A stretch of DNA of 64,000 nucleotides from Obrimoposthia wandeli. Lineage: Eukaryota. This document shows, in pieces, positions 1 through 26,194 of this stretch. The stretch lies in the NCBI GenBank assembly GCA_977020255.1, contig CDROCS010003840.1, positions 1 through 64,000 on the forward strand, written 5' to 3'. Position 1 is the first letter of the stretch, and each line of letters starts with the position of its first letter. The notes under the pieces are model-generated. The model saw only the letters and a list, made by a program, of their open reading frames with translations. It did not search any database and was not told the DNA's origin. The translations under genes and the position numbers were made by a program.

Positions 1-528
1 ATCGCCAGAAAGATTACTGCTACAGCCACCTATATAGCCTCAACCCACACCGACAGTGAAATCAAATAGGCCTGCATGTTTACTGGCAGCAATGAATTCG
101 CCATCAAACAGCCCGATACCGCCAAAATCACGCACGTCAATGGCAGTTTCGGGTAGCCAGTAGCTTTCTTTTAAAAGACGAACTTTAAAATCAATGCCTT
201 TATCAGTGTATTTAGTGTCGCCACTGAAAGTGGGGTCATCACTGTAAAGAAGATCTTGCACCAAGGTGTAGCGAATAGTGGATTCTAACCAGGGTAATAA
301 TTGAAGAGATGCACTGTAATGCATATATTCATCGTTGTACGTTGCCCCAACGCTGAATTCACCTTCTGGTGCTGAACGCCCTGTCGGCATTTGGATCAAA
401 CCCACGCCGCCAAAATCTGACTGTGAAGGGGTTAATACGGTGTAGCTGTAGTCGTCGGCTTGCACATGCAGTACCGGTAGCATCGCCAATGTAATGGCAG
501 AGAGTGAGGTTTTTAAGACAGTATGCAT
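1..528 (-). pseudogene. yjbH: YjbH/GfcD-family outer-membrane protein, 5' part only (runs off the window), with an in-frame TGA at 40-42
   Basis: Signal peptide then SQSDFGGVGLIQMPTGR, a YjbH hallmark. The reverse strand reads G-V-G-TGA-G-Y-I-G where the family has GWGYxG, and the frame stays open after the TGA to the window edge. Confidence 0.85.
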
Positions 529-3220: not shown

Positions 3221-4357
3221 ATGGATTTCACTAAGAAACTGCTCATTGCCGTTATGGCCTCGACCATGCTGGTAGGCTGTACCGTGCCTGGTTCACACTT
3301 AACGGTTGATGATAAAAATATTGTTGTCTCTAATCAGTCACAAAATAGCGATGTTAGCGATCAGGTTAATGTTTACCCTCTAACGGCAAATGCCGTTAAT
3401 CAATTTAAAGCCCCAGCGATTTTTTCTAAAACAAACCCTAGTTTAGATGCAGAAATTGTGCGTTATCAATATCTTATTGGTCCTGGTGATATTTTGAATA
3501 TTACGATTTGGGATCACCCTGAATTGACGATTCCAGCTGGTTCTTACCGAAGTTCTGAAGAATCGGGTAATTGGGTGCACGCCGACGGCACCATTTTTTA
3601 CCCCTATATCGGGTTGGTAAGAGTGGAAGGCAAAACGGTGACGGAAATTCGCACCGTAGTCGCGGAACGTTTGGCTGAATTCATTGAAAGCCCTCAAGTG
3701 GATGTCAATGTTGCTTCTTTTCGCTCGCAAAAATCGTATATAACAGGGGAAGTAAATACCCCAGGTCAACAGCCTATTACCAATGTACCGTTAACACTGC
3801 TTGATGCAATTAATCGCGCAGAGGGGCTAGCTGAAGATGCTGATTGGCGCAACATCACCTTAACGCGCAATGGCAAAGAAGAAAATCTATCTCTCTATGC
3901 TTTAATGCAACGTGGTGATTTAACTCAAAACCGATTACTGCGTGCTGGTGATATCATTCACGTGCCTCGTAACGATGCACAAAAAGTGTTTGTTATGGGT
4001 GAAGTGAACGATCCTAAATTACTTAAAATAGATCGTGCAGGCATGAGCCTGACTGAAGCGTTGAGTAATGTGGGTGGTATTAATGAATTATCTGCTGATG
4101 CAACTGGAGTTTTTGTTATTCGAAGCAAGAAAAAAACGGCAGAGAACGACCCTATTATTGCTGATATTTATCAGCTGAATATCCAAGAAGCGTCAGCTCT
4201 AGTGATCGGTACAGAGTTTGAATTACAGCCATACGATATTGTATATGTCACGGCAGCGCCATTAACGCGCTGGAATCGTGTAATTGCTCAGCTTATTCCA
4301 ACCATAAGTGGATTTAATGATCTTACTGAAGGTGTATTACGGGTTAGGAATTGGTAA
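3221..4357 (+). CDS. wza: Polysaccharide export outer-membrane lipoprotein Wza
   Basis: Lipobox LVGC, YLIGPGDILNITIWDHPELT (PES domain), SLBB repeats, C-terminal RWNRVIAQLIPTI. Confidence 0.97.
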   Translation: MDFTKKLLIAVMASTMLVGCTVPGSHLTVDDKNIVVSNQSQNSDVSDQVNVYPLTANAVNQFKAPAIFSKTNPSLDAEIVRYQYLIGPGDILNITIWDHPELTIPAGSYRSSEESGNWVHADGTIFYPYIGLVRVEGKTVTEIRTVVAERLAEFIESPQVDVNVASFRSQKSYITGEVNTPGQQPITNVPLTLLDAINRAEGLAEDADWRNITLTRNGKEENLSLYALMQRGDLTQNRLLRAGDIIHVPRNDAQKVFVMGEVNDPKLLKIDRAGMSLTEALSNVGGINELSADATGVFVIRSKKKTAENDPIIADIYQLNIQEASALVIGTEFELQPYDIVYVTAAPLTRWNRVIAQLIPTISGFNDLTEGVLRVRNW

Positions 4358-4362
4358 AACTT

Positions 4363-4806
4363 ATGTTCAATAAAATTCTTGTTGTCTGCGTTGGTAACAT
4401 TTGCCGCTCACCATCTGGCGAATATTTACTAAAGCAACACTTACCCAACAAAACGATTAACTCGGCAGGTGTTGCAACTGCCAAAAGTGGTTTAAGTGGT
4501 AAACCTGCCGATAAAATGGCGAATACGGTTGCGCAAGAGCACGGTTATTCATTGGATGCCCACCAAGCGCAACAATTAACCCCCGAGTTGTGTCGTGATC
4601 ATGACCTAATTTTAGTCATGGAGAAAGGGCACATTGACGCTGTTACTCATATAGCACCTGAAGCTAGAGGCAAAACAATGCTCTTTGGGCAATGGATAGG
4701 GCAGCAAGATATTCCCGACCCATACCGTCAAAGTAGAGAAGCCTTTGATCATGCGTATATGTTAATTGAGCAAGCCGCTAATGCATGGGTAGCTAAACTG
4801 AAATAG
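4363..4806 (+). CDS. wzb: Low-molecular-weight protein tyrosine phosphatase Wzb
   Basis: CVGNICRS (CX5R) and DIPDPY motifs. The ATG at 4363 is preferred over the upstream TTG. Confidence 0.96.
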   Translation: MFNKILVVCVGNICRSPSGEYLLKQHLPNKTINSAGVATAKSGLSGKPADKMANTVAQEHGYSLDAHQAQQLTPELCRDHDLILVMEKGHIDAVTHIAPEARGKTMLFGQWIGQQDIPDPYRQSREAFDHAYMLIEQAANAWVAKLK

Positions 4807-4892
4807 TGTGAATGTGAAGTATTGCTTTTGCGGTACTCATTTCAAGTAAAAACTTTGGCCTTCGGCCCCTTACGACCGAGCAATCTATTATC

Positions 4893-7061
4893 ATGAGCGT
4901 TACGCATAATTTACCCGAAAAAAATACCTCCTCTTCTGACGAAATCGATTTAGGCAAATTGTTCGGCATTTTGGTCGATAATCGTTGGTCTATTATTCTA
5001 ATTACCTTTGTGTTTGCCGTGGTTGGTGTGGCGTATGCGCTATTAGCAACACCTGTCTATAAAGCTGATGCACTAATCCAAGTAGAACAAAAAAGCAGTG
5101 GTATGCCAGCCCTTGGTGATATGGGTGAAATGTTTGGTAGTGAATCATCATCAACGACTGAAATTGAAATAATTAAATCACGAATGATCATTGGGAAAAC
5201 GGTTGATAAGTTAAACCTCACGACGGTTTCCAAACCACAATATATGCCAGTTATCGGCAAAGGTTTAGCCCGATTACAAGGTGCTTCGATTGAACTTGAT
5301 GTCAGCCGTTTTGAGATTCCTGCACATGTACTAAAATCTGCGTACACCTTGGTTGTAACTGATAGTGACAATGGTCAGTACGTATTAATCGATGCTGAAG
5401 ATCGTGAAGTATTAACGGGTAAAGTAGGTGAACTTGCTATGCAAGGCGATTACCGTTTATTTGTTACTTCTATCAATGCTGAAACAGGAACGACGTTTAA
5501 AATTGCTAAACGTAAACGTTTAGATGCAATACAGAAATTACAGAAAAACCTTTCAGTGAGTGAGCGTGGTAAAAAAACGGGTATTCTAGAGCTGTCTTTA
5601 ACGGGTGAAAACCGGAAAGATATTGAACGTATTTTAAATAATATTAGCCAAAATTATTTTTTACAAAACGTAGAGCGTAATTCTGCGGAAGCTGAAAATA
5701 GTTTGGAATTTTTACGTTCTCATCTTCCGGATATAAAAATTGAATTAACTTCAGCTGAAGATAAGCTTAACCGTTTTCGTCAAGATAATGACTCGATCGA
5801 TTTAGGGCTTGAAGCGAAATCAACCTTGGAAGTCATGGTAACGCTAGAAGCACAGTTAAATGAACTGACCTTTAAAGAAAGCGAAGTTTCTCAGCGTTTC
5901 ACTAAAGAACACCCAGCTTATCTGTCGTTATTAGATAAGCGTAAAACCTTATTAGGTGAGCGCGAAAGGTTAAATCGCCAAGTACAAAAATTACCGAAAA
6001 CGCAACGTGAAGTTCTGCGTATGACGCGTGATGTAGAAGTAAATCAGCAAATTTACGTGCAACTACTGAATAAAGTGCAAGAGTTGAACATTGTTAAAGC
6101 CAGCACGGTAGGTAATGTACGTATTCTAGATGCAGCTCAATCTTATACCCGTGCAGTAAAACCAAAGAAGCCGTTGATTGTGGTATTAGCCACTTTACTC
6201 GGTGGTATGCTGGCAGTGGCCATTGCACTATTACGCGCAGTGTTCAATCGTGGGGTCGAAAACCCAGATGATGTTGAAGCTATTGGTTTACCCGTTTATG
6301 CAAGTATCCCAATGTCTGATTGGCAGGTTGAGTTAGATAAAAAGATCCAAAATAAGAAAATAAAAACAGTTAATGAAACCTTATTAACCGTTTCAAACCC
6401 TGCTGATTTATCAGTAGAGGCACTACGTAGCCTACGTACTAGCTTACATTTTGCGATGATGGAAGCAAAAAATAATATATTAATGATATCGGGCCCTAGC
6501 CCAAGTATTGGTAAGTCTTTCGTTTCTGCCAATATGGGGGCTGTAGTTGCGAAAGCGGGGCAACGTGTTTTAGTCATTGATGCCGATATGCGTAAAGGCC
6601 AAATGGAGCGCCAAATGGCAGTCTCGAATAAGACAGGATTGTCTGACTATCTATCTGGTCAAATGAGCATTGAAGGTATCATTAAAGAACCGGGTGTTGA
6701 AAACTTGCACTTTATTAGTCGTGGTGATGTGCCACCTAACCCATCAGAGTTGCTGTTGCACCCCCGTTTTCAAGCGTTAATAGAATGGGCATCTGCGAAT
6801 TACGATATGGTTATTATTGACACGCCACCAATTCTTGCGGTTACCGATGCTGCGATTGTTGGCGCGCATGCCGGTACAACCTTTATGGTGGGACGATTTG
6901 GTCAGAATGCAGTTAAAGAAATTGAAGTTGCAAAGCAGCGGTTTGAGAAAAATGGTATTGAAGTGAAAGGCTTTATTTTAAATGCTGTAGTTCGTAAAGC
7001 GAGCAGTTATTACGGTGGGAACTATGGTTATTATAATTATAGTTACGAATCGAAAAAATAA
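4893..7061 (+). CDS. wzc: Tyrosine-protein kinase Wzc
   Basis: DEIDL N-terminus, two TM segments, Walker A GPSPSIGKS, IIDTPP, C-terminal Tyr cluster YYGGNYGYYNYSY. Confidence 0.97.
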   Translation: MSVTHNLPEKNTSSSDEIDLGKLFGILVDNRWSIILITFVFAVVGVAYALLATPVYKADALIQVEQKSSGMPALGDMGEMFGSESSSTTEIEIIKSRMIIGKTVDKLNLTTVSKPQYMPVIGKGLARLQGASIELDVSRFEIPAHVLKSAYTLVVTDSDNGQYVLIDAEDREVLTGKVGELAMQGDYRLFVTSINAETGTTFKIAKRKRLDAIQKLQKNLSVSERGKKTGILELSLTGENRKDIERILNNISQNYFLQNVERNSAEAENSLEFLRSHLPDIKIELTSAEDKLNRFRQDNDSIDLGLEAKSTLEVMVTLEAQLNELTFKESEVSQRFTKEHPAYLSLLDKRKTLLGERERLNRQVQKLPKTQREVLRMTRDVEVNQQIYVQLLNKVQELNIVKASTVGNVRILDAAQSYTRAVKPKKPLIVVLATLLGGMLAVAIALLRAVFNRGVENPDDVEAIGLPVYASIPMSDWQVELDKKIQNKKIKTVNETLLTVSNPADLSVEALRSLRTSLHFAMMEAKNNILMISGPSPSIGKSFVSANMGAVVAKAGQRVLVIDADMRKGQMERQMAVSNKTGLSDYLSGQMSIEGIIKEPGVENLHFISRGDVPPNPSELLLHPRFQALIEWASANYDMVIIDTPPILAVTDAAIVGAHAGTTFMVGRFGQNAVKEIEVAKQRFEKNGIEVKGFILNAVVRKASSYYGGNYGYYNYSYESKK

Positions 7062-7292: not shown

Positions 7293-8599
7293 CAGGGCAA
7301 GATCATGAAGACCCCTTATTCTGAAAGGGCTCAGCCACTGTTGAAATTTAATTAAAACTACCGTTTACTGCACAAAACTGCAATCCCTATTAGGATCAAT
7401 TTGACGATCTATATCATCTGTGATCATATACTTATCTTTAGGTATATGGACATCACTCATGAACGGACTTAGCCTTTTGGATCATATTTCAATAATCAAA
7501 GACCCACGGCAACAGTGGAAAATAGAACACAAATTGACAGACATTATATTTCTGTCGATTGTTGCTGTTATTGGTGGTGCTGATGGTTGGGAAGAAATAC
7601 AAGATTTTGGTGAAGACCACCTTGATTGGCTCAAGCAATATGGCGATTTCGAGAGTGGCATTCCCGTCCATGACACTATTGCTAGAGTGATGGGGATGAT
7701 ATCAGCCAAACAGATGCAAAAGTGCTTTGCTCTGTGGATGGATGACTGTCACCAAGCGACTGACGGTGATGTCATTGCGATTGATGGTAAAACTCTGCGT
7801 GGCACTTATGACAAAGGAAGGCGTCAAGGCGCAATCCACATGGTGAGTGCTTTTAGTGCTGCAAATCAAGTGGTTATTGGGCAGGTCAAAACATCAGAGA
7901 AATCGAATGAAATCACTGCTATACCTGAGCTTCTGAAGCTACTCGACATACGAGGATGCCTTGTCACTATTGATGCGATGGGCTGTCAGCGTGATATAGC
8001 TAAGGCTATAGTTGGCAAAGGTGCAGATTATTTATTGGCGGTAAAAGGTAATCAAAAGCGCTTAGAGAAAGCCTTTAATGACTACTTTAGAATGGAGATG
8101 CTGCAAAACTTCGAAGGAAGCTCATACAGTACTCAGGAAGAAGGGCATGGTCGTAAAGAAACCCGCGTAGCGTTAGTTAATGAAGATTTATCGGTACTAG
8201 GCGATATTGCTTATGATTGGCCAGAATTAAAAGTAATGGGTATCGTTGCATCTATTAGGCAAGTTGGAGATATTCCCGCAGAGGACATATCGATTCGATA
8301 TTACATTAGCTCTAAGAAACAAGATGCAAAAACGTTGCTTGAATCCAGCCGCTCACATTGGTCGATTGAGGTTCAATTGCATTGGAAACTGGATGTAGGC
8401 ATGAATGAAGATGCATGCAGAATAAGGCGAGATGAAGCGGGTGAAAACTTTGCGGCAATTCGTCATATTGCATTAAATCTATTAAATGCAGATAAATCCT
8501 TTAAAGCGGGTTTAAAAAGAAAGCGAACACGGGCAGGTAGAAATGATAGCTACCTATCTGGAGTCCTTATGGGGCAAGGAGCTTCGTAATCTTGCCCTG
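7293..8599 (+). mobile_element. ISAs1-family (H-repeat/IS1358-like) insertion sequence, complete copy
   Basis: Left IR CAGGGCAAGATCATGAAG at 7293 and right IR CTTCGTAATCTTGCCCTG ending at 8599 bracket a transposase. No flanking target duplication was seen. Confidence 0.93.
7459..8589 (+). CDS. ISAs1-family DDE transposase
   Basis: [58 protein letters not shown] motifs. Confidence 0.96.
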
Positions 8600-9477
8600 G
8601 TGCTTTGCTCTGTGGATGGATGACTGTCACCAAGCGACTGACGGTGATGTCATTGCGATTGATGGTAAAACTCTGCGTGGCACTTATGTCAAAGGAAGGC
8701 GTCAAGGCGCAATCCACATGGTGAGTGGTTTTAGTGCTGAAAATCAAGTGGTTATTGGGCAGGTCAAAACATCAGCGAAATCGAATGAAATCAATGCTAT
8801 ACCTGAGTTTTAAGCTACCTGACATACGTGGATGCCTTGTCACCATTGATGCGATGGGTTGTCAGCGTGATATAGCTAGTTAAGGCTATAGCTGGCGTAT
8901 GCGATTTATTTATTGGCGGTAAAAGGTAATCAAAAGCGCTTAGATAAAGCTTTTAATGACTACTTTAGAATGGAAATGCTGCAAAACTACGAAGGAAGCT
9001 CATACAGTACTCAGGAAGAAGGACATGGTCGTAAAGAAACCCGCGTAGCGTTAGTTAATGAAGATTTATCGGTACTGGGTGATATTGCTTATGATTGGCC
9101 AGAATTAAAAGTAATGGGTATCGTTGCATCTATTAGGCAAGTTGGAGATATTTCCGCAGAGGACATATCGATTCGATATTACATTAGCTCTAAGAAACTA
9201 GATGCAAAAACGTTGCTTGAATCCAGCCGCTCACATTGGTCGATTGAGGTTCAATTGCATTGGAAACTGGATGTAGGCATGAATGAAGATGCATGCAGAA
9301 TAAGGCGAGATGAAGCGGGTGAAAACTTTGCGGCAATTCGTCATATTGCATTAAATCTATTAAATGCAGATAAATCCTTTTAAAAGCGGGTTTAAAAGAA
9401 AAGAACATGGCAGGTAGAAATGATAGCTACCTATCTGGAGTCCTTATGGGGCAAGGAGCTTCGTAATCTTGCCCCTG
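8600..9477 (+). mobile_element. Truncated, frameshifted second ISAs1 copy in direct tandem
   Basis: 8600-9477 repeats 7722-8599 and ends in the same right IR (with one extra C). It carries several indels and substitutions. Confidence 0.92.
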
Positions 9478-9622
9478 ATATTCATGCGTTTTCGTGCGGG
9501 TATAAGCAATAATAGTTCCCAAACCTGTTATAAAATGATGGATAACCGTATTGCCTTCTTCTTTCTTATAAGTAAGGGACATAATATTCATTGCAATTAA
9601 TAAATATAATTTAGAGTTTGAA

Positions 9623-10729
9623 ATGAAAAATAAAATAATAACCATATTGAAATTAATAAAATTTGCTTTTCGATCGTCAATTATAGAAAACAAAAAAAGT
9701 AGAGTGCTGCCCAAAGTAATCCAATTACCAATTACCTATGAGTGCGATAGTCGGTGTGTAATGTGTAATATCTGGAAAATGGATCACAGTAATGAGGCGG
9801 ATGTAAATGAATTTGAGACGTTTATACTTGATGATTTATTTAGTGAAGTAGAAGCAATTGGAATTAATGGAGGTGAGGTATCGTTAGTTCCAGAATTAGA
9901 TAGGTATGTAGATAAATGTTTTACTTAAAAAATAATAAACAAATCAATATTATCAGTAATGGATTTAGAACTAAAGTTTTACTAAATCAACTTGAGGTGA
10001 TTTATAAACTTTGTAAAGCGAAGAATGTAGTATTTCATGTTTCAATTTCACTTGATGGATATGAAAAAGTTCATGACGAAATTAGAGGTATTCGTGGCGC
10101 CTATCGAAAAGCTAAATTAACGATCGACGAACTGATTAATAGTAAAAATAGATATTGTGATAGTTTTGATATTGGTTGCACCGTAATCAATCAAAATGTA
10201 AATCACTTAGTTTCATTTGACTATTATGTGAAAACACAAATTACCGGTAAGATATAGACTCGGTATAGAAAATGAAAGAATTAATAATTCAAATATTCTT
10301 AAAGATTTTTCAGTAACAATAAATGACAACAATCAAACTGCAATGGAGTTTTTCCACAAAAAATTTAATGAAGAGAAATTACAGAACATATACCAAAAGT
10401 TTAAATATTTTTCTGTCTATTATTGGTTGTTGAATGAATCTAAAAAAAGATTGATGGGATGTGCTTGGAAAAGCGAAGGAGTGACATTAGACTCTAGAGG
10501 TGACATGTTTTATTGTGCTGTGAAAAGTGAAAAAATAGGTTCCTTAAGAGAAAATAACGGAAAGTCAATTTTCCTTGATAGTAAAAATATTGACTATAGA
10601 GAGTATATAATCGATAACCATTGTAATAATTGCACTCATGATTATCATGGAGTTAAAAGTTATTTGAAAAGTTATTATTTTTATGAAGAAATATTTAAAA
10701 CAATTTTGTCAAATAAGATATATAGTTAA
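9623..10729 (+). pseudogene. Radical SAM protein with a C-terminal SPASM/twitch-like Cys cluster; frameshifted as given
   Basis: CDSRCVMC (CxxxCxxC) at 9743-9766, INGGE, SISLDG..HD.IRG..GAY, then GC..G.TLDSRGDMFYC...IGSL and CNNC. Spread over three frames. Confidence 0.85.
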
Positions 10730-10742
10730 AAGTGAAATTGCT

Positions 10743-11806
10743 ATGAAAATATATTGATAGTTGGATAGTGGCGAATAGAAAACAATTGGTGACCGCGCAA
10801 TTTTAGCGGGAATTATCTCGTTCATTAATAAGGCTTTTGATGATTATCATATCACTCTTGGAAGCTTATATCCATTTTTCTCAAAGAGGACCTTGAGTGA
10901 AGATCAATATTTCATTAACGAAATTATTAATAAAAAAATTGCTATCTCTATTATAGATACTAGAGATAGCAAAGTGTTTAGGAATAACAATATTTTAGAG
11001 TCTTGATTTGCTAATCATGGAGGGGGGGCTCCTTATGGATATTGGAAGAATTGGCTATGGTAGAATATGCCTTCAAATTTGCAAAAAACTAATATAAAAA
11101 CAGCAATTATTGGATGTGGAGTTGGGCCCTTATATAATAAGAAAAATAGAAAGACTGTTGATAATATCATAAGCAATTCAGATTTAACAATATTTCGTGA
11201 TAATAAATCCAATGAGTTTTATAATGAAATAAAAAGAATTCAACCCATTAACCATGTGATAATAAAAATTGCTTTGTTAGTTTCGATCCTGCTGTTGAAT
11301 GCGTGCGCTAAAGTTCAATGAAATTACGAAGAATAAGATAATTGAAGATGAAAAATATTATTTAAATCAAATCGCAGGAGTTTCCATTAGAACAGCAGTC
11401 AATCGAATAATGATGTCAATGATAGGCTTATATAATTAATGGAGGAATATTGATAATGAGTGAAATGCAATAAACTTATTCCAATGCATTATTTCTTTTT
11501 ATAGGTACAGACGACAGAGTTTTTTTGAAGAAGTAAAAGAACAAATACAAAATACTGTCCGTGTCTAAAATTGAGCTTAAACAAACTTTGAATTCCTTCA
11601 AATATGCAACAACAAATGTAGGCATGAGGTTTCACGTTGTTGTATTACAGACTATAGTATCTGGTAGAAACTATATACTCGACTATACAGAACCAAACAA
11701 AGGGAAAATTAGTGGATTTATAGAAGATATAGATGATTATAAATTTTATGAGAATAGATTTTATACATTGCAAGATTCAAATTCAAATTTGAAGACAACA
11801 AAATGA
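10743..11806 (+). pseudogene. Polysaccharide pyruvyl transferase family (WcaK/CsaB-like); frameshifted as given
   Basis: TIGDRAILAGII near the start, a GGG stretch, IIGCGVGPL, SDLTIFRD..S and VGMRFH motifs across several frames. Confidence 0.75.
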
Positions 11807-11875
11807 AAATTCTTTGATGAAAGCAAGCTATATAATAAACTAAATATTTATTCTGGATGAACTATAAAACACAAG

Positions 11876-13080
11876 ATGAAGGTATTAATAGTTAGCTTTT
11901 CAGATTTTAGTGGTGGTGCAGCTAGAGCTGCATTGAGGTTACATAAATCATTATTAAAAAATAGAAATGTATCAGAATCTAAAATGGTTGTTTTTAATAA
12001 ACAAACAGGTTTAAATTCTGTTATAGAAGCAAACCAAAAATTGAAAAAATTGAGGCCTGCATTAGATACTCTATTTTCAAAATCATATAAAAAAAACACA
12101 ATGCATAGCAACAACCTTCTTCCATCATCTGCGCTTATCAAAAATAATTGAAGATGAGTTTTAATAGAGAAACTTTGCATTGGGTAAATGGTCTAATTAG
12201 TATATTGAATAAAAATATTAATATGGTCACGGTGTATTCTACAAGAGTGTGGCCTTTACCGGAGGTTGTCATTACGTATCAACTTGTGATAAATATAAGT
12301 CATCATGTGGAAAGTGTCCAAATTTAAATAGTACTTATAAATATGATCTTTCTAGTTTAATCTTTGATCGGAAAAAATCGATATATAATAATTGTACAAA
12401 TTTATCAGCTATTGGTCTTAGCGAATGGATGGCTGAATCTGCAAAATCAAGTACATTATTTAAAGATAAGACAGTAGTTAACTTACCAAACCCAATTGAC
12501 CTAAATGTTTTCAGAAATTGTACAAGAGATTTTCGTAGTTTATGGGGATTGCCACCAAATAAAAAATTAATTTTATTTGGGGCAGTCTCAGCCGTGGATG
12601 ACCCACGAAAAGGTTTTACGGAACTAATTAAAGCGACTGATTACCTAGATTCTAATTATGAATTTGTTGTTTTTGGAGCAGAGGAGCCCAAAAGTCCAGT
12701 TATATTAAAACATAAAATTCATTATATTGGTAAACTTTATGATGATTTTACCATTATGTCATTATTGAACTCTGTGGATGTAATGGTTGTGCCTTCGCTA
12801 GAAGAAAATTTATCAAATGCGATTATGGAGAGTTTAGCTTGTAAAAACCTCTTTAAGCCAGCCTTTGATGTTGGAGGAAATAGATATGATACAACATAAA
12901 ATAAATGGTTATTTAGCTGAAGTTTAATCCATTATTAGACTGGCTTTGCATCGATTGGTTATTAGAGCAAGATTCGACGGAAATATCTCCCTTATGTACT
13001 GAAAGTGTGAGAATAAAATTCTCGGATGAAATAGTTTCACAACGTTATGTTGATTTCTGTCTTGGATTACTTCATAAATG
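11876..13080 (+). pseudogene. GT4 glycosyltransferase, WcaC-like; frameshifted as given
   Basis: SDFSGGAARAALRLH, AFTGGCHY..CDKYKSSCGKCP, VVPSLEENLSNAIMESLAC. Confidence 0.8.
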
Positions 13081-14322
13081 AGTAAATTAGATAATCCGAA
13101 ACTGCTGGTGATTGATAAGCTTATAAAAGTGTTATTTTATTTTCAATTGGTATGGCTGTTGCAAGATACTTAGGACCTAAACAGTTTGGGTTATATAGCC
13201 ATTACATTTCAGTGATGGCAATGTTTTTACCTATAGCCATGTTTGGGTTAGAGGCAATAACAATGCGTAAATTTGCCAATAATAACTACTATCGTAATAG
13301 TCCTTATCTTATGAGTGCTATAGTTTTTAGGTTTTTATCGGCGACATTAGCGTTATTGGCATTTAGTATTTATTCGTACTTTTACATTGATACTGAAAAT
13401 TCATTTTTAATAATATTAACAATATGCTCAGTTTACTATTATAGCTATTCAATTTATTTCTTCGAATATTATTTCAGAGCAAAATTATTTGTAAGGGAAT
13501 TATTACTAATTAGTTTTATTCAAATATTTAGTAGTTTGATTGTTAAAGAATCCTTTGATTTATTTTAACTTCAGTTATGAATATTTCCTGATGTCATTTT
13601 GTTTTCGACTTTGTAATTTCTGGAATACTATTTTTTGTTTTTTATTTATTTAAAGTCGATAGACTTTGCATGTCTTTCTCTCATGAAATATTGATTGAAT
13701 TGTTTATAAAGGGATCTCCATTATTTATTTCCTGTAAGCTTGTTGGATGGATTTTATAGAAACTATGATATTGTATTCTTTGGGAAAGCGGCTAGTGAGA
13801 ATTTAGTAGGTAACTATGCTATTGCTTCAAAATTGGTTGGCGGAACATTTATAATACCAGTTATTTTGTGTAATAATAAATTAAAAACATTAATGAATGC
13901 ATCCTCAAAAGAGTTATATCGAAAAGAATTTATAACTCTTTTTCGTAATGTTATTGTAATTTCATTTTTGATCTATATTGGATTGAATATAATCGTAGCG
14001 CCAATTGCAAAAATAATTTTGGGTGAAGGGTATGACGAGCCTGGTGACGTTATCATACGCATCATTATATATTGTAGTTGTATCTCTGGATACGCTAGTT
14101 CAAAATCACTTTATTAATTTAAATATGCAAAATCGGTTGCTAACATATTCATTGTTTATAGCGTCTTTTGTTTTTATAATGCATGGAATGCTTTTTGATA
14201 TATATGGAGTTTATGGGGTAATAGTATCTGTCATATTATCTTTCCCATTTGGAATTATAGCAAATTGTATTTTTGGGGATTGGAGGAGAAGTTTATATGC
14301 AATTATTAAAAATGGTCATTAG
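13078..14322 (+). pseudogene. wzx: Wzx-type flippase; frameshifted as given
   Basis: VARYLGPKQFGLY, multiple TM segments and LVGNYAIASKL across three frames. Confidence 0.75.
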
Positions 14323-15469
14323 AAAGTTGCCTTGGTTTATAAAAGATTTAATTGCTTATGCTTATAACAAAATAAGGAAAAGAAGAAGAATCAATGTGTT
14401 TAAACCGATCATGAAAAAAGCACTTCTTGTTTATATTGTTGAACCTTTTACTACAAAAAAAACACATTCTACTCATTCCAATTTTATGGAAGCAAGGCTA
14501 ATTGCTAATGGTTTGAATCTAAACGGATTTAATGTTGATGTTGTTAGTTATGATGAAGATTATGAGCACATAGAATTAAACATTATGATGTGATTGTAGG
14601 TTTTGGCAACCTGTTGAAAAAGCAGTTAAGTTGGGTGTCTCTCCAGTTGCTATTTTTGTATGCTACTGATGTGAGTTCATGTAAAATATTAAAATATTAA
14701 GGAGAGCATTCTTTTAAAATGAACGGAGTTCATTGTTTTTATATAGAACCCCTAAATATTCTTTCTCCTTCAACATGCTTTTTTCTGATGCGGTATTTTA
14801 TTTGGGTAATAAAGCTAGAGCTAAAACTTTTGAAACATTTAGTGAGCGAGTTGTTGTAAACGCATGTCTTCCGCCTATTTCAAATATTGTATGTGACAAT
14901 ATTGATGATCTTTCATTTGTTAAAAAGTATCGGAGGAGTTTTGTATGGTTCAAAGTTCTGAGTAAAGCATAAAGGTCTTAATTTATTATTACAATTTTTC
15001 ATTAAGCATAAAAATTATAAGTTATATGTGTGCGGGAATATACATGATGAATTGATTAATTGGGATGAATATAGAGCTGCTTACCAATGTGATAATATTA
15101 TATTTTATGGATTGAAGATATTGCTAATAAGTGTACTTTACGATGTTTCTTTTCGACAGGTTTTGTTTACTTTTATTTTACCTTCTTTGTAAAGTAAAGG
15201 GCTCCTGAGCTATAGTGAATACAATATATTCAGGAGGAATGATTCCAATCATAACAGCTGAATGTGGCTTTTCCGTAGATAAAAATTTCTTAATTGATGG
15301 TCTATCATATGCTGATTTGGAAGATTGTATTTTGAAATTAGATAAGCTACCTGATGATTTTTTATATACATATAGAAACGAAATATTTAATAAGGTTTTT
15401 ACGGATTTTACAGAGAAGAATTACTCTGAAAAGTTTGATTATGTTATAAATCAAGTTTGTAAGGACTAA
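14297..15469 (+). pseudogene. Probable glycosyltransferase; fragmented
   Basis: GGAGGA SD before the ATG at 14297. Fragments include HSNFMEARLIANGL and GGMIPIIT.ECG (GT-B-like C-terminus). Located in the capsule cluster. Confidence 0.5.
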
Positions 15470-15473
15470 TATT

Positions 15474-16219
15474 ATGATTGATTACTCTATAATAATTGCA
15501 ACATTCAATGCAGAACGATATATCACTAAAGTGTTAGAATCGGTAAAAAACCTTCACGTAGAACCCTCTTTTAAGTTTGAACTTATTGTGGTAGATGGAA
15601 AGTCCAGCGACAACACCTTAAAGCTATTAAGTAAATTTGAGGATTTAATAGATATATTAATTGTCGAAAAGGACTCTGGTATCTATGATGTGGAATAAAG
15701 GTGTTAATGCGTCACAAGGCAAAATGGATTATGTTTATTGAAATGATGATGAAATATTGCCAGATGCTTTAATTTCTTATCATAATCACATTAAATCTAA
15801 TTCATTATATAGTTTTGATTTTATTAGTTCTAGAGTCCAGTTAGTAACCGATAAAGATGAAAATTTAAGAGTAATAGGAGATGAGTTTAACTGGCGTATT
15901 TTCAGAAAACCGATGAATGTGGCTCATGTTGGAGCTTTGCATTCAAGACGATTATTTGAAGTACTGGTATCTATGATCTTAATTTCAAGATTTGCGGTGA
16001 TTATGAGTTACTTCTAGGAAAGAGATAAGCTGCGTTCATCATATTTACCTGAGGTGACTGCCAATATGATGATTGGTGGTGTTAGCTATGCATCACCCAA
16101 AGCTGTTATTGAAAACAATTTCTGCACAAAAAATTACATTCCGGATCATCAAGGTTATCTCTTTTATTTCGAAAGTTTTATTTGTTATTTAAATTAAAAG
16201 TTAAATGTTGGTTAAGTAA
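15474..16219 (+). pseudogene. GT2 glycosyltransferase, WcaE-like; frameshifted as given
   Basis: YSIIIATFN, VVDGKSSDNT, EKDSGIYD(..W)NKG, AHVGALH. Confidence 0.8.
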
Positions 16220-17385
16220 TGATGGTTAAAATTGTGTTTTTTTTACTTTTTTTTCTCCCTTCACTATTTTCAGGCTTATTTAATGTGTCATTTGCACCGG
16301 GCTCTATCGTTGCTCTATTTATTTGTAATAGCCTTATGCTTTCCGGATGTCAAACTATATAAAATAAGCAAAGTGATCTAACTGCTTTTATTGTTCTATA
16401 TTAGTGTTAACTTTGTTTTCAATAGTTTTTTCATTATTTCAATATCATGGTTTTAATGGGGTTGAGGGTAAAGTTATTATATCTTACTTTATTTTTTCTT
16501 TTATGGTTTTGTGTTGTTATGTTTTATACCAATACTTTAATTCTTTAAGTGATAATAGTATTTATACCGTAATATCTTTCTATTATAAATCATGCGTGGT
16601 ATTAGCTATAGTATGTATCTTTTTTACGTTAATAGGTATTCTGACTAGCAAAAGTATGTACTTTTTTTCTGAACCATCTCATTTCGCATTGATTTATGGG
16701 GTGTTATCTCTATATTTGTCAGTAAGTGAAAAGGGAAGGCGATTTAGAAACCATATATTGATAATTTCTCTTTTTTTTGGTCTAGGTTTAAGCAATCTCG
16801 TTTTGTTAGTGTTTTCTCTTTGTAATTGGTTTTTCTCCATAAGAAGAATAAATGAATACCTATACTTGTTTTTTTATGTTTATACTCTCTATTGATTATA
16901 CCTATATTCTTTGATGTTCACATTTACAGATAGGTTAGCAATTTAAATGACTCAACGGATAACCTTCTGGGTATTGGTTTACATGTCAGGAGTTGCTAGA
17001 TTTTTTTAAACTTCACTAATCTGAATTATATGGTGTTGGATTTCATGCAAGGGTACATTAATTCAGTAGTAGGGAAGTATCAACAGTTACTGGATAATCT
17101 TAAGGTTGGCACTTTAAATTTAAAAGATGGTTCATTTATTCTCTCTAAGTTAATTGTAGAGTTTGGCCTTTTGGGGGTATTTGGAGTTATTATATATGTT
17201 TTTTTCCTTTTTAAATTAAACTCCAAGTTTAGGTGCTCTGAGATTTCGACTGAAAGAGATTTACTTTATTATACTATACTGCTCTTCTTTGTTCCTCTGT
17301 TTGTTAGGAGGGGTATTTTAACCTAACGTGGTGCTTTTCTTATATCCATTTTTAGCGTTTTTTTTCTTTTATAAAAGAGGTCCTG
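16219..17385 (+). pseudogene. Wzy-like polymerase (polytopic membrane protein); frameshifted as given
   Basis: Very hydrophobic AT-rich fragments with FFSEPSHFA and LIVEFGLLGV, between GT genes in a wzx/wza/wzc locus. Confidence 0.55.
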
Positions 17386-18660
17386 ATGGAACCTGAATCT
17401 TTAAATAGTCAAAATATAGTAATAATCAACTTTCTGATTACTGTGGTAGTGCAGCAATAGCGGCAGTTACAATATGAAATTGTTCTACTACAATACAAAT
17501 TCAAGAATTAAACTTATTACTTCTGAAAAGAAAAAACCTAATGTGAACGAAAGGCTGTCATACTTTTTTAATTTTGGATTTAGGCTTATATCTCATGCTA
17601 TTATGAAGGTGAGCTTTAAGAAACAAGAGCACAAGTCCTCACTAAATATATTCAGTTCATCATTGATTAAACGATATTTAAGAAAAAACTTCGACAATAT
17701 TGATATAGTTCACTTTCACTGGATAAATAACGAAACTTTGTCTTTGTTTTTTGTAAGAGAATTGTTATCAAATGGTAGAAGTAAAAGGTTTGTATTTACA
17801 TTGCATGATGATTGGTTTTTCAGTAACAGAGCATGCTTTCGTATGATGATAGCTATAAAGTGGCTATAGAATGATTTGCTTTTCAAATTAAATATTGATT
17901 ATCTTATTTTTAATTTGAAATGACTATGTTACCTTTTTTAAAAAAAGTAATGTTCTATTTACTGTACCTTCTAGCTATTTATATGAAAAGGCTAAATCTA
18001 GTTTGCTACTTAATGATGCTATTATAAAGTATTGTTCCTTTAATTATATTGATTGTGTGACATTCCAACCACTAGAAATGCCCCAGTAAGATTAGAGTTT
18101 GGCTTGCCAATGGATAGGGTTTTTATTTTTGCTCTGATCTGCTGGTGAATTTGAATTCTATAGTGTGGATTTTGTTGGAAGCATACTTTGGGTAAAATTA
18201 AAAAAAGGCACCCTAAATTCAATTCATTGTTTGTTAACTTTGGTGGCAAAGCACCTGGCAAGCTCAATGTGTGGTTTTGATTTAGTTGAGTTAAAGCTAT
18301 ATTTCTGACAAAGTTGCACTTGCGGCTATATTCCAGGTAGATTGTACTGTAGTGCCATCTCGTACAGAATCCTTTGGTCAGGTTGCCGCTGAAAGCTTAT
18401 CTTGTCAAACGCCTGTATGTGCTTTTAATAACAGTGGATTAACTGATATTGTTTTTAATAATATCTCAGGTTTTTTGGTTCAAGCATTCGATATCGAGTT
18501 ATTCTCGGAAGCACTATTTAATGTATATATTATGGACCCGGAAAAGAGAAAAAATTTAGGTGTTAATGGTCGTAAAACATATTATTTTAAGTGAATTTTC
18601 TAAAGATATTATTCAAAATAAATGGGAATTAATTTATAATGGTGAAGAAAATAATGAATA
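17386..18660 (+). pseudogene. Second WcaC-like GT4 glycosyltransferase; frameshifted as given
   Basis: IINFSDY.GSAAIAA, DIVHFHWINN, FTLHDDW, PSRTESFGQVAAESLSCQTPV. Confidence 0.75.
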
Positions 18661-19760
18661 AAGTAGCTTTAATTTCTACTATAACTGATGGTTTGCTCTT
18701 ATTTAGCTGAGCTTTTGCTGAAAAAAGGTTATGAGGTACATGGACTTATTCGCCGTGCTTCCTCTTTTAATACACAACGTATAGATAGTTTAATTTTTAG
18801 CTCAGATAAAGTTCATCTTCATTATGGTGATTTGACTGATTCTTCTAACCTAATTCGTCTTGTAAAAGATATTCAACCTGATGAAGTTTATAATCTGGGT
18901 GCGATGTCGCACGTGGCTGTTTCATTTGAATCGCCAGAATATACTGCTGATGTGGATGCGATGGGCACCATTCGTTTGCTGGAAGCGATCCGTATTAATG
19001 GTCTTGAGAAAAAGACCCGCTTTTATCAAGCTTCAACTTCCGAGCTGTTCGGTGAAGTTCAAGAAACGCCACAAAAAGAAACCACTCCTTTTTACCCGCG
19101 CTCTCCTTATGCCGTAGCCAAAATGTATGCGTATTGGATCACGGTAAACTACCGTGAGTCGTATGGTATGTATGCTTGTAACGGTATTTTGTTTAACCAT
19201 GAGTCACCACGTCGGGGTGAAACCTTTGTTACCCGTAAAATCACCCGCACCCTTGCGAACATCTCTCTGGGTTTAGAGTCGTGCTTAGAGTTGGGCAACA
19301 TGGACGAGACTGGGTGATCAGTCATGCAAAAGATTATGTGCGTATGCAATGGATGATGTTGCAACAAGACGTGGCGGATGATTTCGTTATCGCCACCGGT
19401 AAGCAAATCTCAGTGCGTGAATTTGTCCGTATGTCTGCGAAAGAAGCGGGTATCGAGCTGGCGTTTACTGGCGAAGGTGTGAATGAAATCGCGACAGTTA
19501 CAGGGGTTGATAGCGCAAAAGTATCTGATGTTGCTATCGGCGATGTGATTGTGCGTGTTAATCCTAAGTTCTTCCGTCCTGCAGAAGTTGAAACGCTATT
19601 AGGCGACCCAAGTAAAGCCAAAGCAAAACTTGGTTGGGTACCTGAAATTACCGTTGAAGAAATGTGTATTGAAATGGTGCAGTCGGATGTCGCGAAATCA
19701 AAGCAGCACGCGTTATTGAAAGCCCACGGTTTTGATGTGTCTATCTCTTTGGAAAACTAA
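18654..19760 (+). pseudogene. gmd: GDP-mannose 4,6-dehydratase; frameshifted near 18680 and 19315
   Basis: [70 protein letters not shown]. Confidence 0.95.
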
Positions 19761-19765
19761 ACACT

Positions 19766-20737
19766 ATGTTAGTGAATAAAAAACGTGTTTTTGTCGCCGG
19801 GCACCGCGGCATGGTGGGCTCCGCCATTGTGCGTCAGTTATCAGCCCGTGATGACATTGAGCTGGTGACGCGTAACCGCACAGAATTAGACTTGACCAGC
19901 CAACAGGCGGTGAGTGATTTTTTTGCGGCTGAACGTATCGATGAAGTGTATTTGGCGGCGGCAAAGGTGGGGGGCATTCATGCCAACAACACTTACCCAG
20001 CTGAGTTCATTTTTGAAAACCTGATGATGGAATGCAATATTGTGCACGCTGCGCATCAGAATGATGTGCAAAACCTGCTCTTTTTAGGCTCTTCGTGCAT
20101 TTACCCGAAATTGGCTGAGCAGCCGATGACCGAAACGGCGCTATTAACGGGTACGTTAGAAGCGACCAACGAGAGCGTACGCGATTGGCAAGATTGCGGG
20201 TATCGTTGTGTGAATCGTACAACCGCCGGGTTACGGTCGTAATTACTCTCGCGTGATGCCGACTAACCTGTATGGCATGAACGATAATTTCCATCCGGAC
20301 AATTCTCACGTTATTCCGGCATTGATGCGCCGCTTCCACGAAGCAAAGCTGAACAATGACAAAGAAGTGGTGGTGTGGGGTACGGGTACCCCGATGCGCG
20401 AGTTCTTGTATGTGGATGACATGGCTGCGGCCTCTATCCATGTCATGGAGCTAGACACGCAGACTTATCAGGACAATACCCAGCCGATGCTGCTTCTGCC
20501 ATCAATGTAAAATGGGTGTGATTGCAATTATTCGCGAAATGGTGAAACCATGGCGAAAGTCGTGGGTTTCACGGTGATGTCGTGTTTGACAGCACCAAAC
20601 CTGACGGTGCGCCCTGTAAGCTGATGAACGTGAGCTGCTTAGCCGATTTAGGTTGGCGTTACCAGATTGAGCTTGAGCAAGGTTTAGCTACAACCTATCA
20701 GTGGTTCTTGGCCAACCAGGCGAACTTTCGCGCTTAA
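19766..20737 (+). pseudogene. fcl: GDP-L-fucose synthase; several frameshifts
   Basis: [57 protein letters not shown]. Confidence 0.93.
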
Positions 20738-20760
20738 GCGTACACACCAGCAAGGATAAG

Positions 20761-21228
20761 ATGGACTATGACACAGCGCTTAGAGTTGGCGTTATTTAAA
20801 CGGTGGTGGCGAATACCCCGTTGATATCCATTGATTTGATTGTGTGCAATGCGCAAGGTCAGGTGCTGCTCTCGGTCAGCGCCTGAAACTGTCCGGCCAA
20901 GGGGACTGGTTTGTCCCTGGTGGGCGTATTTGCAAAAGATGAATCGATGGCCGTGGCGTTTTCGGTTAGTACAGGCGTTGTTAGGCTGCGGATCAGATTC
21001 CGTGACGCCCAGTTTATCGGGCCGTTTGAACACTTCTATTCAGATAACTTTTCCGGTGTCGACTTTTCTACCCATTACGTGGTGCTGGGCTATCGCCTGG
21101 TTGATATTGACCTTGATAGCCTGCCTCAAGAGCAACATCATCATTACTGCTGGTTTGGCGTCAGAGAGTCACGGCCTGACGAGGCGCACCTGCACACCAA
21201 GTGGTACTTTATGAATGGAAATCAGTAA
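20761..21228 (+). pseudogene. gmm: GDP-mannose mannosyl hydrolase (Nudix); frameshifted
   Basis: VVANTPLISIDLIV, WFVPGGRI.KDES, EHFYSDNF...STHYVVLGY. Confidence 0.85.
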
Positions 21229-21231
21229 ATC

Positions 21232-22430
21232 ATGTTATTACCTGTCATTATGGCGGGCGGCTCAGGCAGTCGTTTATGGCCATTATCGCGTACGCTATAC
21301 CCCAAGCAATTTCTCTCTCTGACCAACAATACCACCATGCTGCAAGAAACGGTGGCACGCTTGGAGGGGCTCTCGCATCAGGCGCCTTTCTTCATTTGTA
21401 ATGAAGAGCACCGTTTCATTGTGGCCGAGCAGCTGCGTCAGCAGCAGTTATCACACAGTGGTATCGTGTTAGAGCCAGTCGGGCGTAATACCGCCCCCGC
21501 GATAGCCTTGGCCGCCTTGCATGCTACCGCGAATGATGATGACCCATTGTTATTGGTACTGGCAGCAGACCATGTCATCTTAAATCAATCGGCGTTTGTG
21601 GATGCGGTGAATTCAGCCATTCCTCAAGCTGAAGTTGGCAAGCTAGTCACTTTTGGTATTGTGCCTCACGCCCCTGAAACCGGGTATGGGTATATCCGAC
21701 AAGGGCTAGCTGTTTCTGATGTGGCGTACACCGTGGATGCGTTTGTTGAAAAACCGGATGCAGAGACAGCCCAGCAATACTTGAGAGTGGGGAGTATTAT
21801 TGGAACAGTGGGATGTTTTTATCCAAAGCGTCCCGTTACCTGCAAGGGCTTGAAGCCCACCGTCCCGATATTTTGACTGCGTCAGCAAGTTACGATGGTG
21901 CCTATGCAGATTTGATTTCACCGTTTGATGAGCGGCTTTTTCCCGCTTGCCCGGCGATTCGGTCGACTATGCGGTCATGGAAAAAACCCAGGATGCGGTG
22001 GTTGTGCCGATGGACGCAAACTGGAGTGATGTGGGCTCTTGGTCTGCACTCTGGGAAGTGAATGCAAAAGACACCCAAGGTAATGCCACTCGGGGTGATG
22101 TCTTAATGGAAAATACCACTAACAGCTACATTTATTCGCAGAGTAAATTGGTGGCCACTGTTGGGGTGGACAACTTGGTGGTCGTAGAAACTAAAGACGC
22201 GGTCTTGATTGCGCATAAAGACAACGTGCAAGATGAAAGCGAATAGTCAATCAGTTAAAAAAGCAGACCGCCCCGAATACCTGCAACACCGTGAGGTTTA
22301 TCGTCCTTGGGGCTCGCATGATGCTATCGCTGATGGTGTGCGTTTTCATGTGAAGCGTTTGACGGTGAAGCCTGGCGAGAAAACGGCGACCCAAATGCAT
22401 TATCACCGCGCCGAGCACGGGTGGTGGCAT
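21232..22430 (+). pseudogene. manC: Mannose-1-phosphate guanylyltransferase/isomerase; frameshifted, 3' end missing
   Basis: [61 protein letters not shown]. Confidence 0.92.
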
Positions 22431-22469
22431 CTCCAGTTTTTAAAGAGGAGGCCTTATATTGGCGGGGGA

Positions 22470-23605: not shown

Positions 23606-23622
23606 TTTATGATAATCGCAAA

Positions 23623-24984: not shown

Positions 24985-25069
24985 ATACCATTGTTTAATC
25001 AATAATGAGTTTCTAGTTTCTAGTTATCGCAACCTTTTACCCATTTCCCTCTTTAGTAAGTTCACTATT

Positions 25070-26170: not shown

Positions 26171-26194
26171 TCACAGAGTGTAAAATGGGTAATG

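What the first reader, a model, noticed from the sequence alone, without database searches (positions are those of the whole stretch)
9623..11806. Radical SAM/SPASM gene one base away from fusion with a pyruvyltransferase-like gene, heading a capsule cassette
Seen: a CxxxCxxC/GGE/SPASM-like radical SAM ORF is the first cassette gene. Its TAA (10727-10729) lies 13 nt before the ATG of a WcaK/CsaB-like ORF. Removing one T gives read-through S-K-S-E-I-A-M in frame, and single-base errors are common here. Established: pyruvyltransferases add ketal pyruvate from PEP and need no radical chemistry; SPASM enzymes oxidise sugars (BtrN) or mature proteins (anSME). Inference: a coupled or fused enzyme making an uncharacterised polysaccharide modification, such as sugar oxidation or a non-pyruvate ketal substituent. 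This is my best candidate for an undescribed system in the window.
Basis: partly seen in the sequence, partly recalled or inferred. Interest (0 to 1): 0.72.

Follow-up and report, generated by a model that had tools for sequence, protein, structure and literature searches.

The report
Radical-SAM plus pyruvyltransferase capsule gene pair
Two neighbouring sugar-coat genes in a Photobacterium contig (an iron-sulfur "radical" enzyme and a pyruvate-adding enzyme) belong to a very widespread, unstudied pair that most other bacteria carry welded into one protein, but this copy is riddled with reading-frame breaks and its "almost fused" look is an accident of those breaks.

Summary
Neither gene is an open frame, though. 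The radical SAM gene lies in three frame pieces. The pyruvyltransferase gene has at least 12 stops or shifts and runs to about 11860, not 11806.

A roughly 93% identical copy in a food metagenome has one extra A after 10723. That makes the radical SAM gene end at a TGA overlapping the next ATG (ATGA). "One base from fusion" is therefore not meaningful.

Relatives of this radical SAM enzyme are tied to PS_pyruv_trans almost everywhere:
- Of 80 genome loci from more than 12 phyla, 61 are single fused proteins, 8 have the transferase directly downstream and 3 have it elsewhere in the locus.
- The fused form alone has at least 974 sequence clusters, including Vibrio cholerae, Enterobacter cloacae and Microcystis.
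- The window's gene sits in a well-supported clade of two-gene forms.

No curated family model and none of eight full-text literature searches describes the pair. The enzyme has the CxxxCxxC motif plus four invariant cysteines, which suggests one auxiliary cluster (twitch-like, not full SPASM). Its product is unknown.

Whether the breaks are assembly error (about 60-65%) or real decay is unsettled.

The parts
9623..10729 (+). Radical SAM enzyme gene with a twitch-like auxiliary-cluster domain, about 369 codons, written in three frame pieces (9623-9928, 9916-10257, about 10253-10729). Judged by the relative, its native end is probably the TGA at 10744-10746.
   Evidence: Frames. Pfam Radical_SAM and SPASM give weak hits on the pieces. 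tblastn with P0004 and L013 covers the full length at 40-53% identity across the three pieces. All invariant residues of the family are present.
10743..11860 (+). Polysaccharide pyruvyltransferase (PF04230) gene, broken by at least 12 stops or frameshifts. The stop at 11804-11806 is premature.
   Evidence: Pfam PS_pyruv_trans E = 3.4e-6 on 11067-11318. CsaB model matches on two pieces. The L013 and L009 transferases align over 10779-11854, 31-46% identity by segment, with stops inside. Signature motifs GD, GGG, GCGVGP, RD, MRFH and DYT..KGK are kept.
11876..12899 (+). GT4 glycosyltransferase gene, also in pieces. It is the third member of the recurrent order radical SAM - transferase - GT4.
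   Evidence: Pfam Glycos_transf_1 and Glyco_trans_1_4 on 12249-12896. A GT4 gene lies within 300 nt downstream of the module in 27 of 80 loci.
12900..18600 (+). Rest of the low-GC cassette: Wzx-type flippase pieces (13152-14117), unassigned membrane-like pieces, and GT4 pieces (17474-18594). All are fragmented.
18688..22775 (+). gmd, fcl, gmm, manC and the start of manB (GDP-fucose/mannose supply), each carrying 1-nt frameshifts or stops.
   Evidence: tblastn with the Enterobacter cloacae genes of L089, 45-80% identity. The junctions are not in long homopolymers. Pfam.
3221..7061 (+). wza, wzb and wzc export genes, intact, upstream of the cassette.
   Evidence: Pfam.
7420..9383 (+). One intact DDE_Tnp_1 transposase gene (7420-8589) and a partial second one (8913-9383), lying between wzc and the cassette.
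   Evidence: Pfam.

Best explanation
The window is a Photobacterium (P. profundum group) contig inside a 1.35-Gb host assembly. Positions 9623-11860 hold two separate, translationally coupled genes. In the intact state their stop and start overlap as ATGA. The first gene encodes a radical SAM enzyme with one auxiliary 4Fe-4S cluster. The second encodes a PS_pyruv_trans-family transferase.

Together they are the two-gene form of a widespread module that most lineages carry as one 720-800-residue protein, always in polysaccharide loci.

Inferred mechanism: both enzymes act at the cytoplasmic membrane face on the same sugar of a lipid-linked repeat unit or chain end.
- The transferase adds a three-carbon unit from phosphoenolpyruvate (PEP).
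- The radical SAM partner abstracts a hydrogen with the 5'-deoxyadenosyl radical, using its auxiliary cluster as electron sink.
- The final substituent would therefore be something other than a plain pyruvate ketal.

Of the possible orders, I favour the radical step acting on the PEP-derived group or the carbon next to it, as PolH does on 3'-enolpyruvyl-UMP. I put that at about 35-40%. The radical step preparing the acceptor sugar first is about 25%.

The copy written here cannot make either protein. The breaks are more likely consensus errors in a poorly covered, strain-specific stretch (about 60-65%) than real decay.
For: Shown:
- Fusion and adjacency statistics: 61 fused, 8 directly downstream, 3 elsewhere in the locus, out of 80 loci that were picked by a radical SAM motif alone.
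- 64 of the 150 best representatives are 651-900 residues long, and 79 of 150 hit both window genes colinearly.
- The fused form has at least 974 clusters at 90% identity.
- Four stand-alone homologues are each followed directly by the transferase gene, one with a 4-nt and one with an 8-nt overlap.
- On the tree, fused and split forms are separate starred clades with only 3 state changes, and the window lies in the split clade.
- The neighbours are GT4, GT2, Wzt/Wzm, Wzx and Wzc genes.
- Invariant residues are the CxxxCxxC motif, GGE and four C-terminal cysteines.
- The AlphaFold model of a stand-alone homologue has pLDDT 95. Its nearest structures are tied: SkfB, BlsE, SuiB, anSME, viperin, MoaA, DesII and BtrN, Z 17-23.
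- The fused protein models as one rigid body, pTM 0.92 over 775 residues, with a helical connector.
- Organism: the window's PurF falls in a 90%-identity cluster with P. profundum, P. indicum and P. frigidiphilum.
- ATGA overlap in the relative.
- PolH precedent: PMC5365060.

For error rather than decay:
- Substitution divergence from the X1 copy is even (5.5-7% in most pieces, 9.7% in one), but gaps range from 0 in 279 nt to 19 in 375 nt.
- 25 substitutions in the radical SAM 3' half include none at codon position 2 (P = 4e-5).
- A frame-restoring run of three indels within 23 nt garbles seven otherwise conserved residues.
- All catalytic motifs are kept.
- Other agents reported error-ridden patches in other bacterial contigs of this assembly (unchecked leads).
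Against: - No experiment, known glycan structure or literature ties the module to any product. The chemistry is inference from family habits and from one analogy.
- Structural neighbours are tied and do not pick a reaction.
- Eight loci, mostly a basal Acidobacteriota clade, have the radical SAM gene with no transferase nearby.

Against the error reading:
- Intact genes sit inside or beside the broken stretch: an IS at 7420-8589, a galU-like gene at 24064-24984 and a wecA-like gene at 25070-26170.
- manB is split by an insert that carries an IS66 fragment.
- Frameshift sites in gmd, fcl and manC are not in long homopolymers.
- Lesion density differs sixfold between the two genes.
- The X1 copy consists of short contigs of depth 3-6 and may hold errors of its own.
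Confidence: 0.6

Rival explanations
1. The lesions are real. After IS insertion between wzc and the cassette, the whole polysaccharide locus (9.6-30 kb) stopped being used and is decaying, so the pair is a pseudogene remnant in this strain.
For: - Fragmentation covers 9.6-30 kb whatever the GC content, while 30-64 kb is intact at the same homopolymer density.
- Intact IS, galU-like and wecA-like genes lie inside or beside the broken stretch.
- manB is split around an IS66 fragment, and there are three wecA-like copies.
- There are nonsense substitutions and a 2-nt insertion at the transferase start.
- Frameshift sites are not homopolymeric in gmd, fcl and manC.
Against: - Substitution level against the X1 copy is uniform while indel density varies more than tenfold.
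- There is no excess of second-position changes.
- Every catalytic motif is retained.
- A compensated cluster of three indels occurs within 23 nt.
- A free-living Photobacterium would be expected to delete so much dead DNA.
- Similar noisy patches were noted in other contigs of the assembly.
Confidence: 0.35
2. The locus encodes, or recently encoded, a single fused radical SAM-pyruvyltransferase protein, and the stop at 10727 is a sequencing slip.
For: Fused homologues are the majority form in nature. One deleted T would join the frames.
Against: - The window lies in a 99%-supported clade of 14 rows, all of them two-gene forms.
- Stand-alone homologues end at the same position: P0004 aligns to residue 378 of 386.
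- Fused proteins carry roughly 45 more connecting residues, part of a helical connector. The window has no sequence for them.
- The near-identical relative gives an ATGA overlap, not a joined frame.
Confidence: 0.04
3. The two enzymes share only an operon. The radical SAM enzyme makes or alters a nucleotide sugar (dehydrogenase, epimerase or decarboxylase like BtrN, DesII or BlsE) independently of pyruvylation.
For: BlsE, DesII and BtrN, all sugar-acting twitch enzymes, are among the nearest folds. Some relatives lack a nearby transferase.
Against: Fusion in 61 of 80 loci, a fixed gene order, a rigid two-domain model (pTM 0.92) and stop/start overlaps all argue for action on a common substrate. 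Precursor-making enzymes are rarely fused to tailoring transferases.
Confidence: 0.12

Closest known systems
BtrN / BlsE / DesII (twitch-domain radical SAM enzymes acting on sugars)
   Same: Partial TIM barrel with CxxxCxxC, plus a short C-terminal domain. Four cysteines spaced C-x17-C ... C-x2-C could hold one auxiliary 4Fe-4S cluster. Fold matches: BlsE Z 21.3, DesII 18.8, BtrN 17.2.
   Different: Only 12-16% identity. No NCBIfam model of these enzymes reaches its cut-off. None of them is fused or paired with a pyruvyltransferase. They act on soluble small molecules, not polysaccharide intermediates.
anSME, SkfB, SuiB (SPASM/twitch peptide-modifying radical SAM enzymes)
   Same: Best or near-best fold matches: SkfB Z 22.8, SuiB 21.2, anSME 20.3. 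A weak Pfam SPASM hit.
   Different: The seven-cysteine SPASM motif is absent; only four cysteines are invariant. There is no peptide-binding RRE domain and no precursor peptide gene. The context is glycan synthesis.
PolH/NikJ with the enolpyruvyl transferase NikO/PolA (octosyl acid pathway)
   Same: A PEP-derived group is placed on a sugar hydroxyl, and a radical SAM enzyme then works on that product (PMC5365060).
   Different: That transferase is of the MurA type as I recall (not checked here), not PS_pyruv_trans. The substrate is a nucleotide. No sequence kinship was tested here. This is an analogy of logic only.
CsaB / WcaK / Pvg1p polysaccharide pyruvyltransferases (PF04230)
   Same: The second gene, and the C-terminal half of the fused proteins, match PF04230 (up to 119 bits) and the CsaB model. 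The fold is GT-B-like.
   Different: CsaB model scores are far below its cut-off (77-130 against 213). As far as I know, the characterised members work alone and need no iron-sulfur partner.

Membership tests
Radical SAM superfamily (PF04055) | CxxxCxxC motif that binds the SAM-cleaving 4Fe-4S cluster | tested here: met
   C-D-S-R-C-V-M-C in piece 1. Invariant in 88 relatives.
Radical SAM superfamily (PF04055) | Pfam score above the gathering cut-off | tested here: inconclusive
   Window pieces score 16.1 and 20.2 bits against 29.5, because the gene is cut into pieces. Full-length homologues score 43-59 bits.
Radical SAM superfamily (PF04055) | GGE SAM-binding motif and partial TIM-barrel fold | tested here: met
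   G-I-N-G-G-E in the window. The homologue model has pLDDT 95 and Z about 20 to many radical SAM structures.
SPASM subfamily (PF13186) | Seven-cysteine motif for two auxiliary clusters | tested here: not met
   Only four C-terminal cysteines are invariant: C284, C302, C338 and C341 of P0004:8-386. The window has the same four. The Pfam SPASM hit is below cut-off (17.5 against 21.5).
Twitch-type radical SAM enzymes | Short C-terminal domain with one auxiliary cluster | tested here: inconclusive
   The cysteine count and spacing fit, and BlsE, MoaA, SkfB and BtrN are fold neighbours. The NCBIfam twitch model NF033640 scores 30-63 against a cut-off of 170. Cluster content needs spectroscopy.
PS_pyruv_trans (PF04230) | Pfam score above the gathering cut-off | tested here: met
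   27.6 against 25.3 on window piece 11067-11318. Neighbouring or fused homologues score 65-119 bits.
PS_pyruv_trans (PF04230) | Transfer of pyruvate from PEP to form a ketal | not testable with these tools
   No biochemical data. Motifs conserved in the fused family are present in the window's broken gene.
Fused radical SAM-PS_pyruv_trans proteins | Both domains in one reading frame, joined by a helical connector | tested here: not met
   The window's clade is split. A stop codon and a separate ATG are present. The relative shows an ATGA overlap.

The most novel reading that the evidence does not exclude
The radical SAM-pyruvyltransferase module makes a so far undescribed sugar substituent. 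This would be a PEP-derived three-carbon unit reworked by radical chemistry, for example carbon-carbon bonded to the sugar, oxidised or decarboxylated. It would sit on capsules, O-antigens and, in ABC-transporter loci, perhaps on chain ends, across more than a dozen phyla.
Probability: 0.45. Interest if true: 0.78.

Novelty: new variant of a known kind. Interest (0 to 1): 0.55.

Why it matters
Pyruvate ketals are among the commonest charged decorations of bacterial surface sugars. As far as I know, the characterised transferases work alone. Here, at least a thousand sequence clusters weld such a transferase to a radical enzyme, including Vibrio cholerae, Enterobacter cloacae, Providencia, Pectobacterium, Microcystis and many marine Bacteroidota. 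This points to a piece of glycan chemistry that nobody has assigned. It may affect serotype, phage and immune recognition, and export signals. The question is directly testable, because intact copies sit in culturable, genetically tractable bacteria. For this window itself the lesson is cautionary: the locus is unreadable as written and should not be taken as a fusion.

Tried and rejected
- The fusion-by-error reading was rejected on the tree, the homologue end points and the X1 relative.
- Full SPASM membership was rejected because only four cysteines are invariant.
- Eight full-text literature searches on radical SAM or Fe-S oxidoreductase with pyruvyl transferase, O-antigen, capsule or carboxyethyl found nothing relevant. 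I opened two candidate papers and both were off topic.
- NCBIfam has no model above cut-off.
- A blastn search of plasmids found no match.
- I looked for an E. coli serogroup carrying the fused gene, hoping to read the product from a known O-antigen structure. There was no DNA match.
- The search for a close intact orthologue of the window's gene reached 53% identity at best.
- GTDB relatives of the window's assembly are not available.
- Runs X2 and X3 hold none of the stretch.
- The protein atlas gave generic names only.
- The promoter and terminator scan was at chance level, with no terminator between the genes.
- Word-index protein searches cannot reach full-length kin from the broken pieces, so I spent the one exhaustive search on the 158-residue C-terminal piece.

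Full report
WHAT IS IN THE SEQUENCE

The window is contig C3840:1-64000 of a 1.35-Gb, 6912-contig assembly that has no relatives among bacterial species genomes. It is therefore a bacterial contig inside a host assembly. Its PurF protein falls in a 90%-identity cluster with Photobacterium profundum, P. indicum and P. frigidiphilum.

Upstream of the finding lie:
- yjbF/gfcC/yjbH-type genes on the minus strand, partly broken;
- intact wza, wzb and wzc (3221-7061);
- one intact and one partial DDE transposase gene (7420-9383).

From 9.6 to 18.6 kb the GC content falls to 28-30%, against about 42% elsewhere. This is the cassette that the finding heads.

THE OBSERVATION

The two "ORFs" do not exist as such.

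- The radical SAM gene is in three pieces: 9623-9928, 9916-10257 and about 10253-10729. The frame changes beside an A6 run (9927-9932) and near 10235-10240.
- The transferase gene has at least 12 stops or shifts. Homologues align up to about 11854, so 11806 is a premature stop.
- Pfam sees Radical_SAM and SPASM weakly on the pieces, and PS_pyruv_trans above its cut-off on 11067-11318.

A NEAR-IDENTICAL COPY ELSEWHERE

One food-metagenome run (X1) holds short contigs 92-94% identical to 9560-12400. Its differences from the window are informative.

- At the second frameshift it reads A6-T where the window has A4-C. That is two more bases, and it restores the frame.
- At the transferase start it reads M-K-K-I-L-I-I-G-W-Y-G, where the window has a 2-nt insertion and a TGG-to-TAG change.
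- It has an extra A after 10723. With that base the radical SAM frame runs five codons further and ends at a TGA that overlaps the transferase ATG.
- Between 10653 and 10675 three indels (+1, -2, +1) turn the window's K-S-Y-L-K-S-Y-Y into P-K-L-S-S-V-I-V. The latter matches the Carboxylicivirga homologue better.

The 13-nt gap, and hence "one base from fusion", is therefore a product of lesions. The native state is a 4-nt ATGA overlap, as in locus L007. Locus L004 has an 8-nt overlap.

ERROR OR DECAY?

Fragmentation covers 9.6-30 kb regardless of GC content. The 30-64 kb stretch is intact, including a 4.2-kb ORF, at the same homopolymer density. So the damage is local.

For consensus error:
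- Substitution divergence from X1 is even (5.5-7% in most pieces, 9.7% in one), but gaps vary from 0 in 279 nt to 19 in 375 nt.
- Of 25 substitutions in the radical SAM 3' half, none is at codon position 2 (P = 4e-5). Thirteen codon changes are silent and ten are mostly conservative.
- Every catalytic motif survives.
- The compensated cluster of three indels fits a noisy patch better than natural mutation.
- Other agents reported error-ridden patches in other bacterial contigs of this assembly (these are leads I did not check).
- A strain-specific capsule locus in a mixed Photobacterium population would get the least read depth.

For real decay:
- Intact IS, galU-like (24064-24984) and wecA-like (25070-26170) genes sit inside or beside the broken stretch.
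- manB is split (about 22.5 kb and 28.8 kb) around an insert that carries an IS66 fragment.
- Frameshift sites in gmd, fcl and manC are not in long homopolymers.

I put error at about 60-65%. Only the raw reads can settle this.

THE FAMILY

The pieces are too short for the word-index search to reach full-length kin. I therefore spent the one exhaustive search on the 158-residue C-terminal piece. It returned 254 hits.

- Of the best 150, 64 are 651-900 residues and 45 are 300-460 residues.
- The long ones carry Radical_SAM at the N-terminus and PS_pyruv_trans at the C-terminus.
- 79 of the 150 match both window genes in order.
- Four stand-alone homologues with enough contig are each followed directly by a PS_pyruv_trans gene, and in three of the four a GT4 gene follows close behind, as in the window.

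A scan of species genomes used only a radical SAM motif plus tblastn and gave 80 loci from more than 12 bacterial phyla, a Methanosarcinales archaeon and a candidate-phyla-radiation (CPR) bacterium. Of these, 61 are fused, 8 have the transferase directly downstream, 3 have it elsewhere in the locus, and 8 have none. Most of the last group form a basal Acidobacteriota clade.

On the tree, fused and split forms are separate starred clades with three state changes. The window sits with L009, L013, L010 and P0004 in a 99%-supported clade of two-gene forms.

The fused form has at least 974 clusters at 90% identity. Their names are only "polysaccharide pyruvyl transferase family protein" or "radical SAM protein". 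They occur in Vibrio cholerae, Enterobacter cloacae, Providencia stuartii, Pectobacterium, Pantoea, Agarivorans and Pseudoalteromonas. The split form has at least 380 clusters.

Neighbours are GT4 (directly downstream in 27 loci), GT2, sugar epimerases, Wzt/Wzm ABC exporters (23 loci, all fused forms, with Wzt directly upstream in 6), Wzx and Wzc. In E. cloacae the fused gene lies in the O-antigen cluster: galF, wzx, fused gene, GT4, wzy, GT2, gmd, fcl, gmm, manC, manB. The window has much the same gene set.

THE ENZYME

Invariant in 88 relatives are the three cysteines of CxxxCxxC, the GGE motif, and four C-terminal cysteines spaced C-x17-C ... C-x2-C. Several arginines and histidines are nearly invariant. 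The window keeps all of these.

Four cysteines mean one auxiliary cluster, as in twitch enzymes, not the seven-cysteine SPASM.

- The AlphaFold model of P0004:8-386 has pLDDT 95.2.
- Its nearest solved folds are tied: SkfB Z 22.8, BlsE 21.3, SuiB 21.2, anSME 20.3, viperin 20, MoaA 19.6, DesII 18.8, BtrN 17.2. They do not pick a reaction.
- No NCBIfam model reaches its cut-off.
- The fused protein P0018 models with pLDDT 91.8 and pTM 0.92 over 775 residues, with a helical connector. This implies a fixed arrangement of the two domains. Its C-terminal half matches GT-B folds.

HOW IT PROBABLY WORKS (INFERENCE)

Fusion, fixed order, coupling overlaps and a rigid two-domain model indicate that both activities act on one substrate. 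Given the context, that substrate is a lipid-linked repeat unit or a chain end. Twitch and SPASM enzymes mostly carry out two-electron oxidations or radical couplings, with the auxiliary cluster as electron sink (established knowledge of anSME, BtrN and the sactisynthases).

A direct precedent for radical chemistry on a PEP-derived group is PolH, which cyclises 3'-enolpyruvyl-UMP to octosyl acid phosphate (PMC5365060).

I therefore favour this order: the transferase installs the three-carbon unit, then the radical enzyme reworks it or the adjacent sugar carbon (35-40%). The reverse order is about 25%. Independent action is about 12%. The product is unknown.

WHAT IS KNOWN

Eight full-text searches found no paper that links the two enzyme types in glycan synthesis. 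The architecture is visible in public annotation (JGI double names), so it is not unseen. It appears uncharacterised.

HOUSEKEEPING

- For the tree I joined the three radical SAM pieces with X at each break, inside a script.
- For one search I applied the differences that read laying listed to about 150 nt in order to read the frames.

Noticed in passing
window 22209-32073: manB appears split: domain I at about 22.5 kb and domains III-IV at 28799-29287. Between them lie an intact galU-like gene (24064-24984), an intact wecA-like gene (25070-26170) and an IS66 transposase fragment (27263-27880). There are three wecA-like copies in all: one broken (29560-30901) and one intact on the minus strand (30997-32073).
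   Followed up: partly
loci L062, L065, L044, L070 and 19 others (genome contigs): All 23 loci that hold Wzt/Wzm ABC-exporter genes carry the fused form. In 6 of them Wzt, which has a Wzt_C sugar-binding domain, lies directly upstream. The fused enzyme might make the chain-end cap that such exporters recognise.
   Followed up: partly
loci L048, L058, L059, L063, L071, L086, L088: A basal clade of the radical SAM family, mostly Acidobacteriota, has no pyruvyltransferase within 10 kb. It may show the enzyme's ancestral, transferase-independent role.
   Followed up: no
window 9623-11860: Lesion density differs about sixfold between the two adjacent genes: 2 frame breaks in the radical SAM gene against at least 12 in the transferase gene. 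Substitution divergence from the X1 relative is the same in both.
   Followed up: partly
window 40-1396 (minus strand): yjbH stops after 161 residues of a profile about 658 long, and gfcC is in two pieces. Both lie right at the contig start, where read depth is usually lowest.
   Followed up: no
L089:13694-15413: In one Enterobacter cloacae genome the wzy (EpsG-type) gene next to the fused radical SAM-transferase gene is interrupted by IS1. The sister contig L090 has it intact.
   Followed up: no
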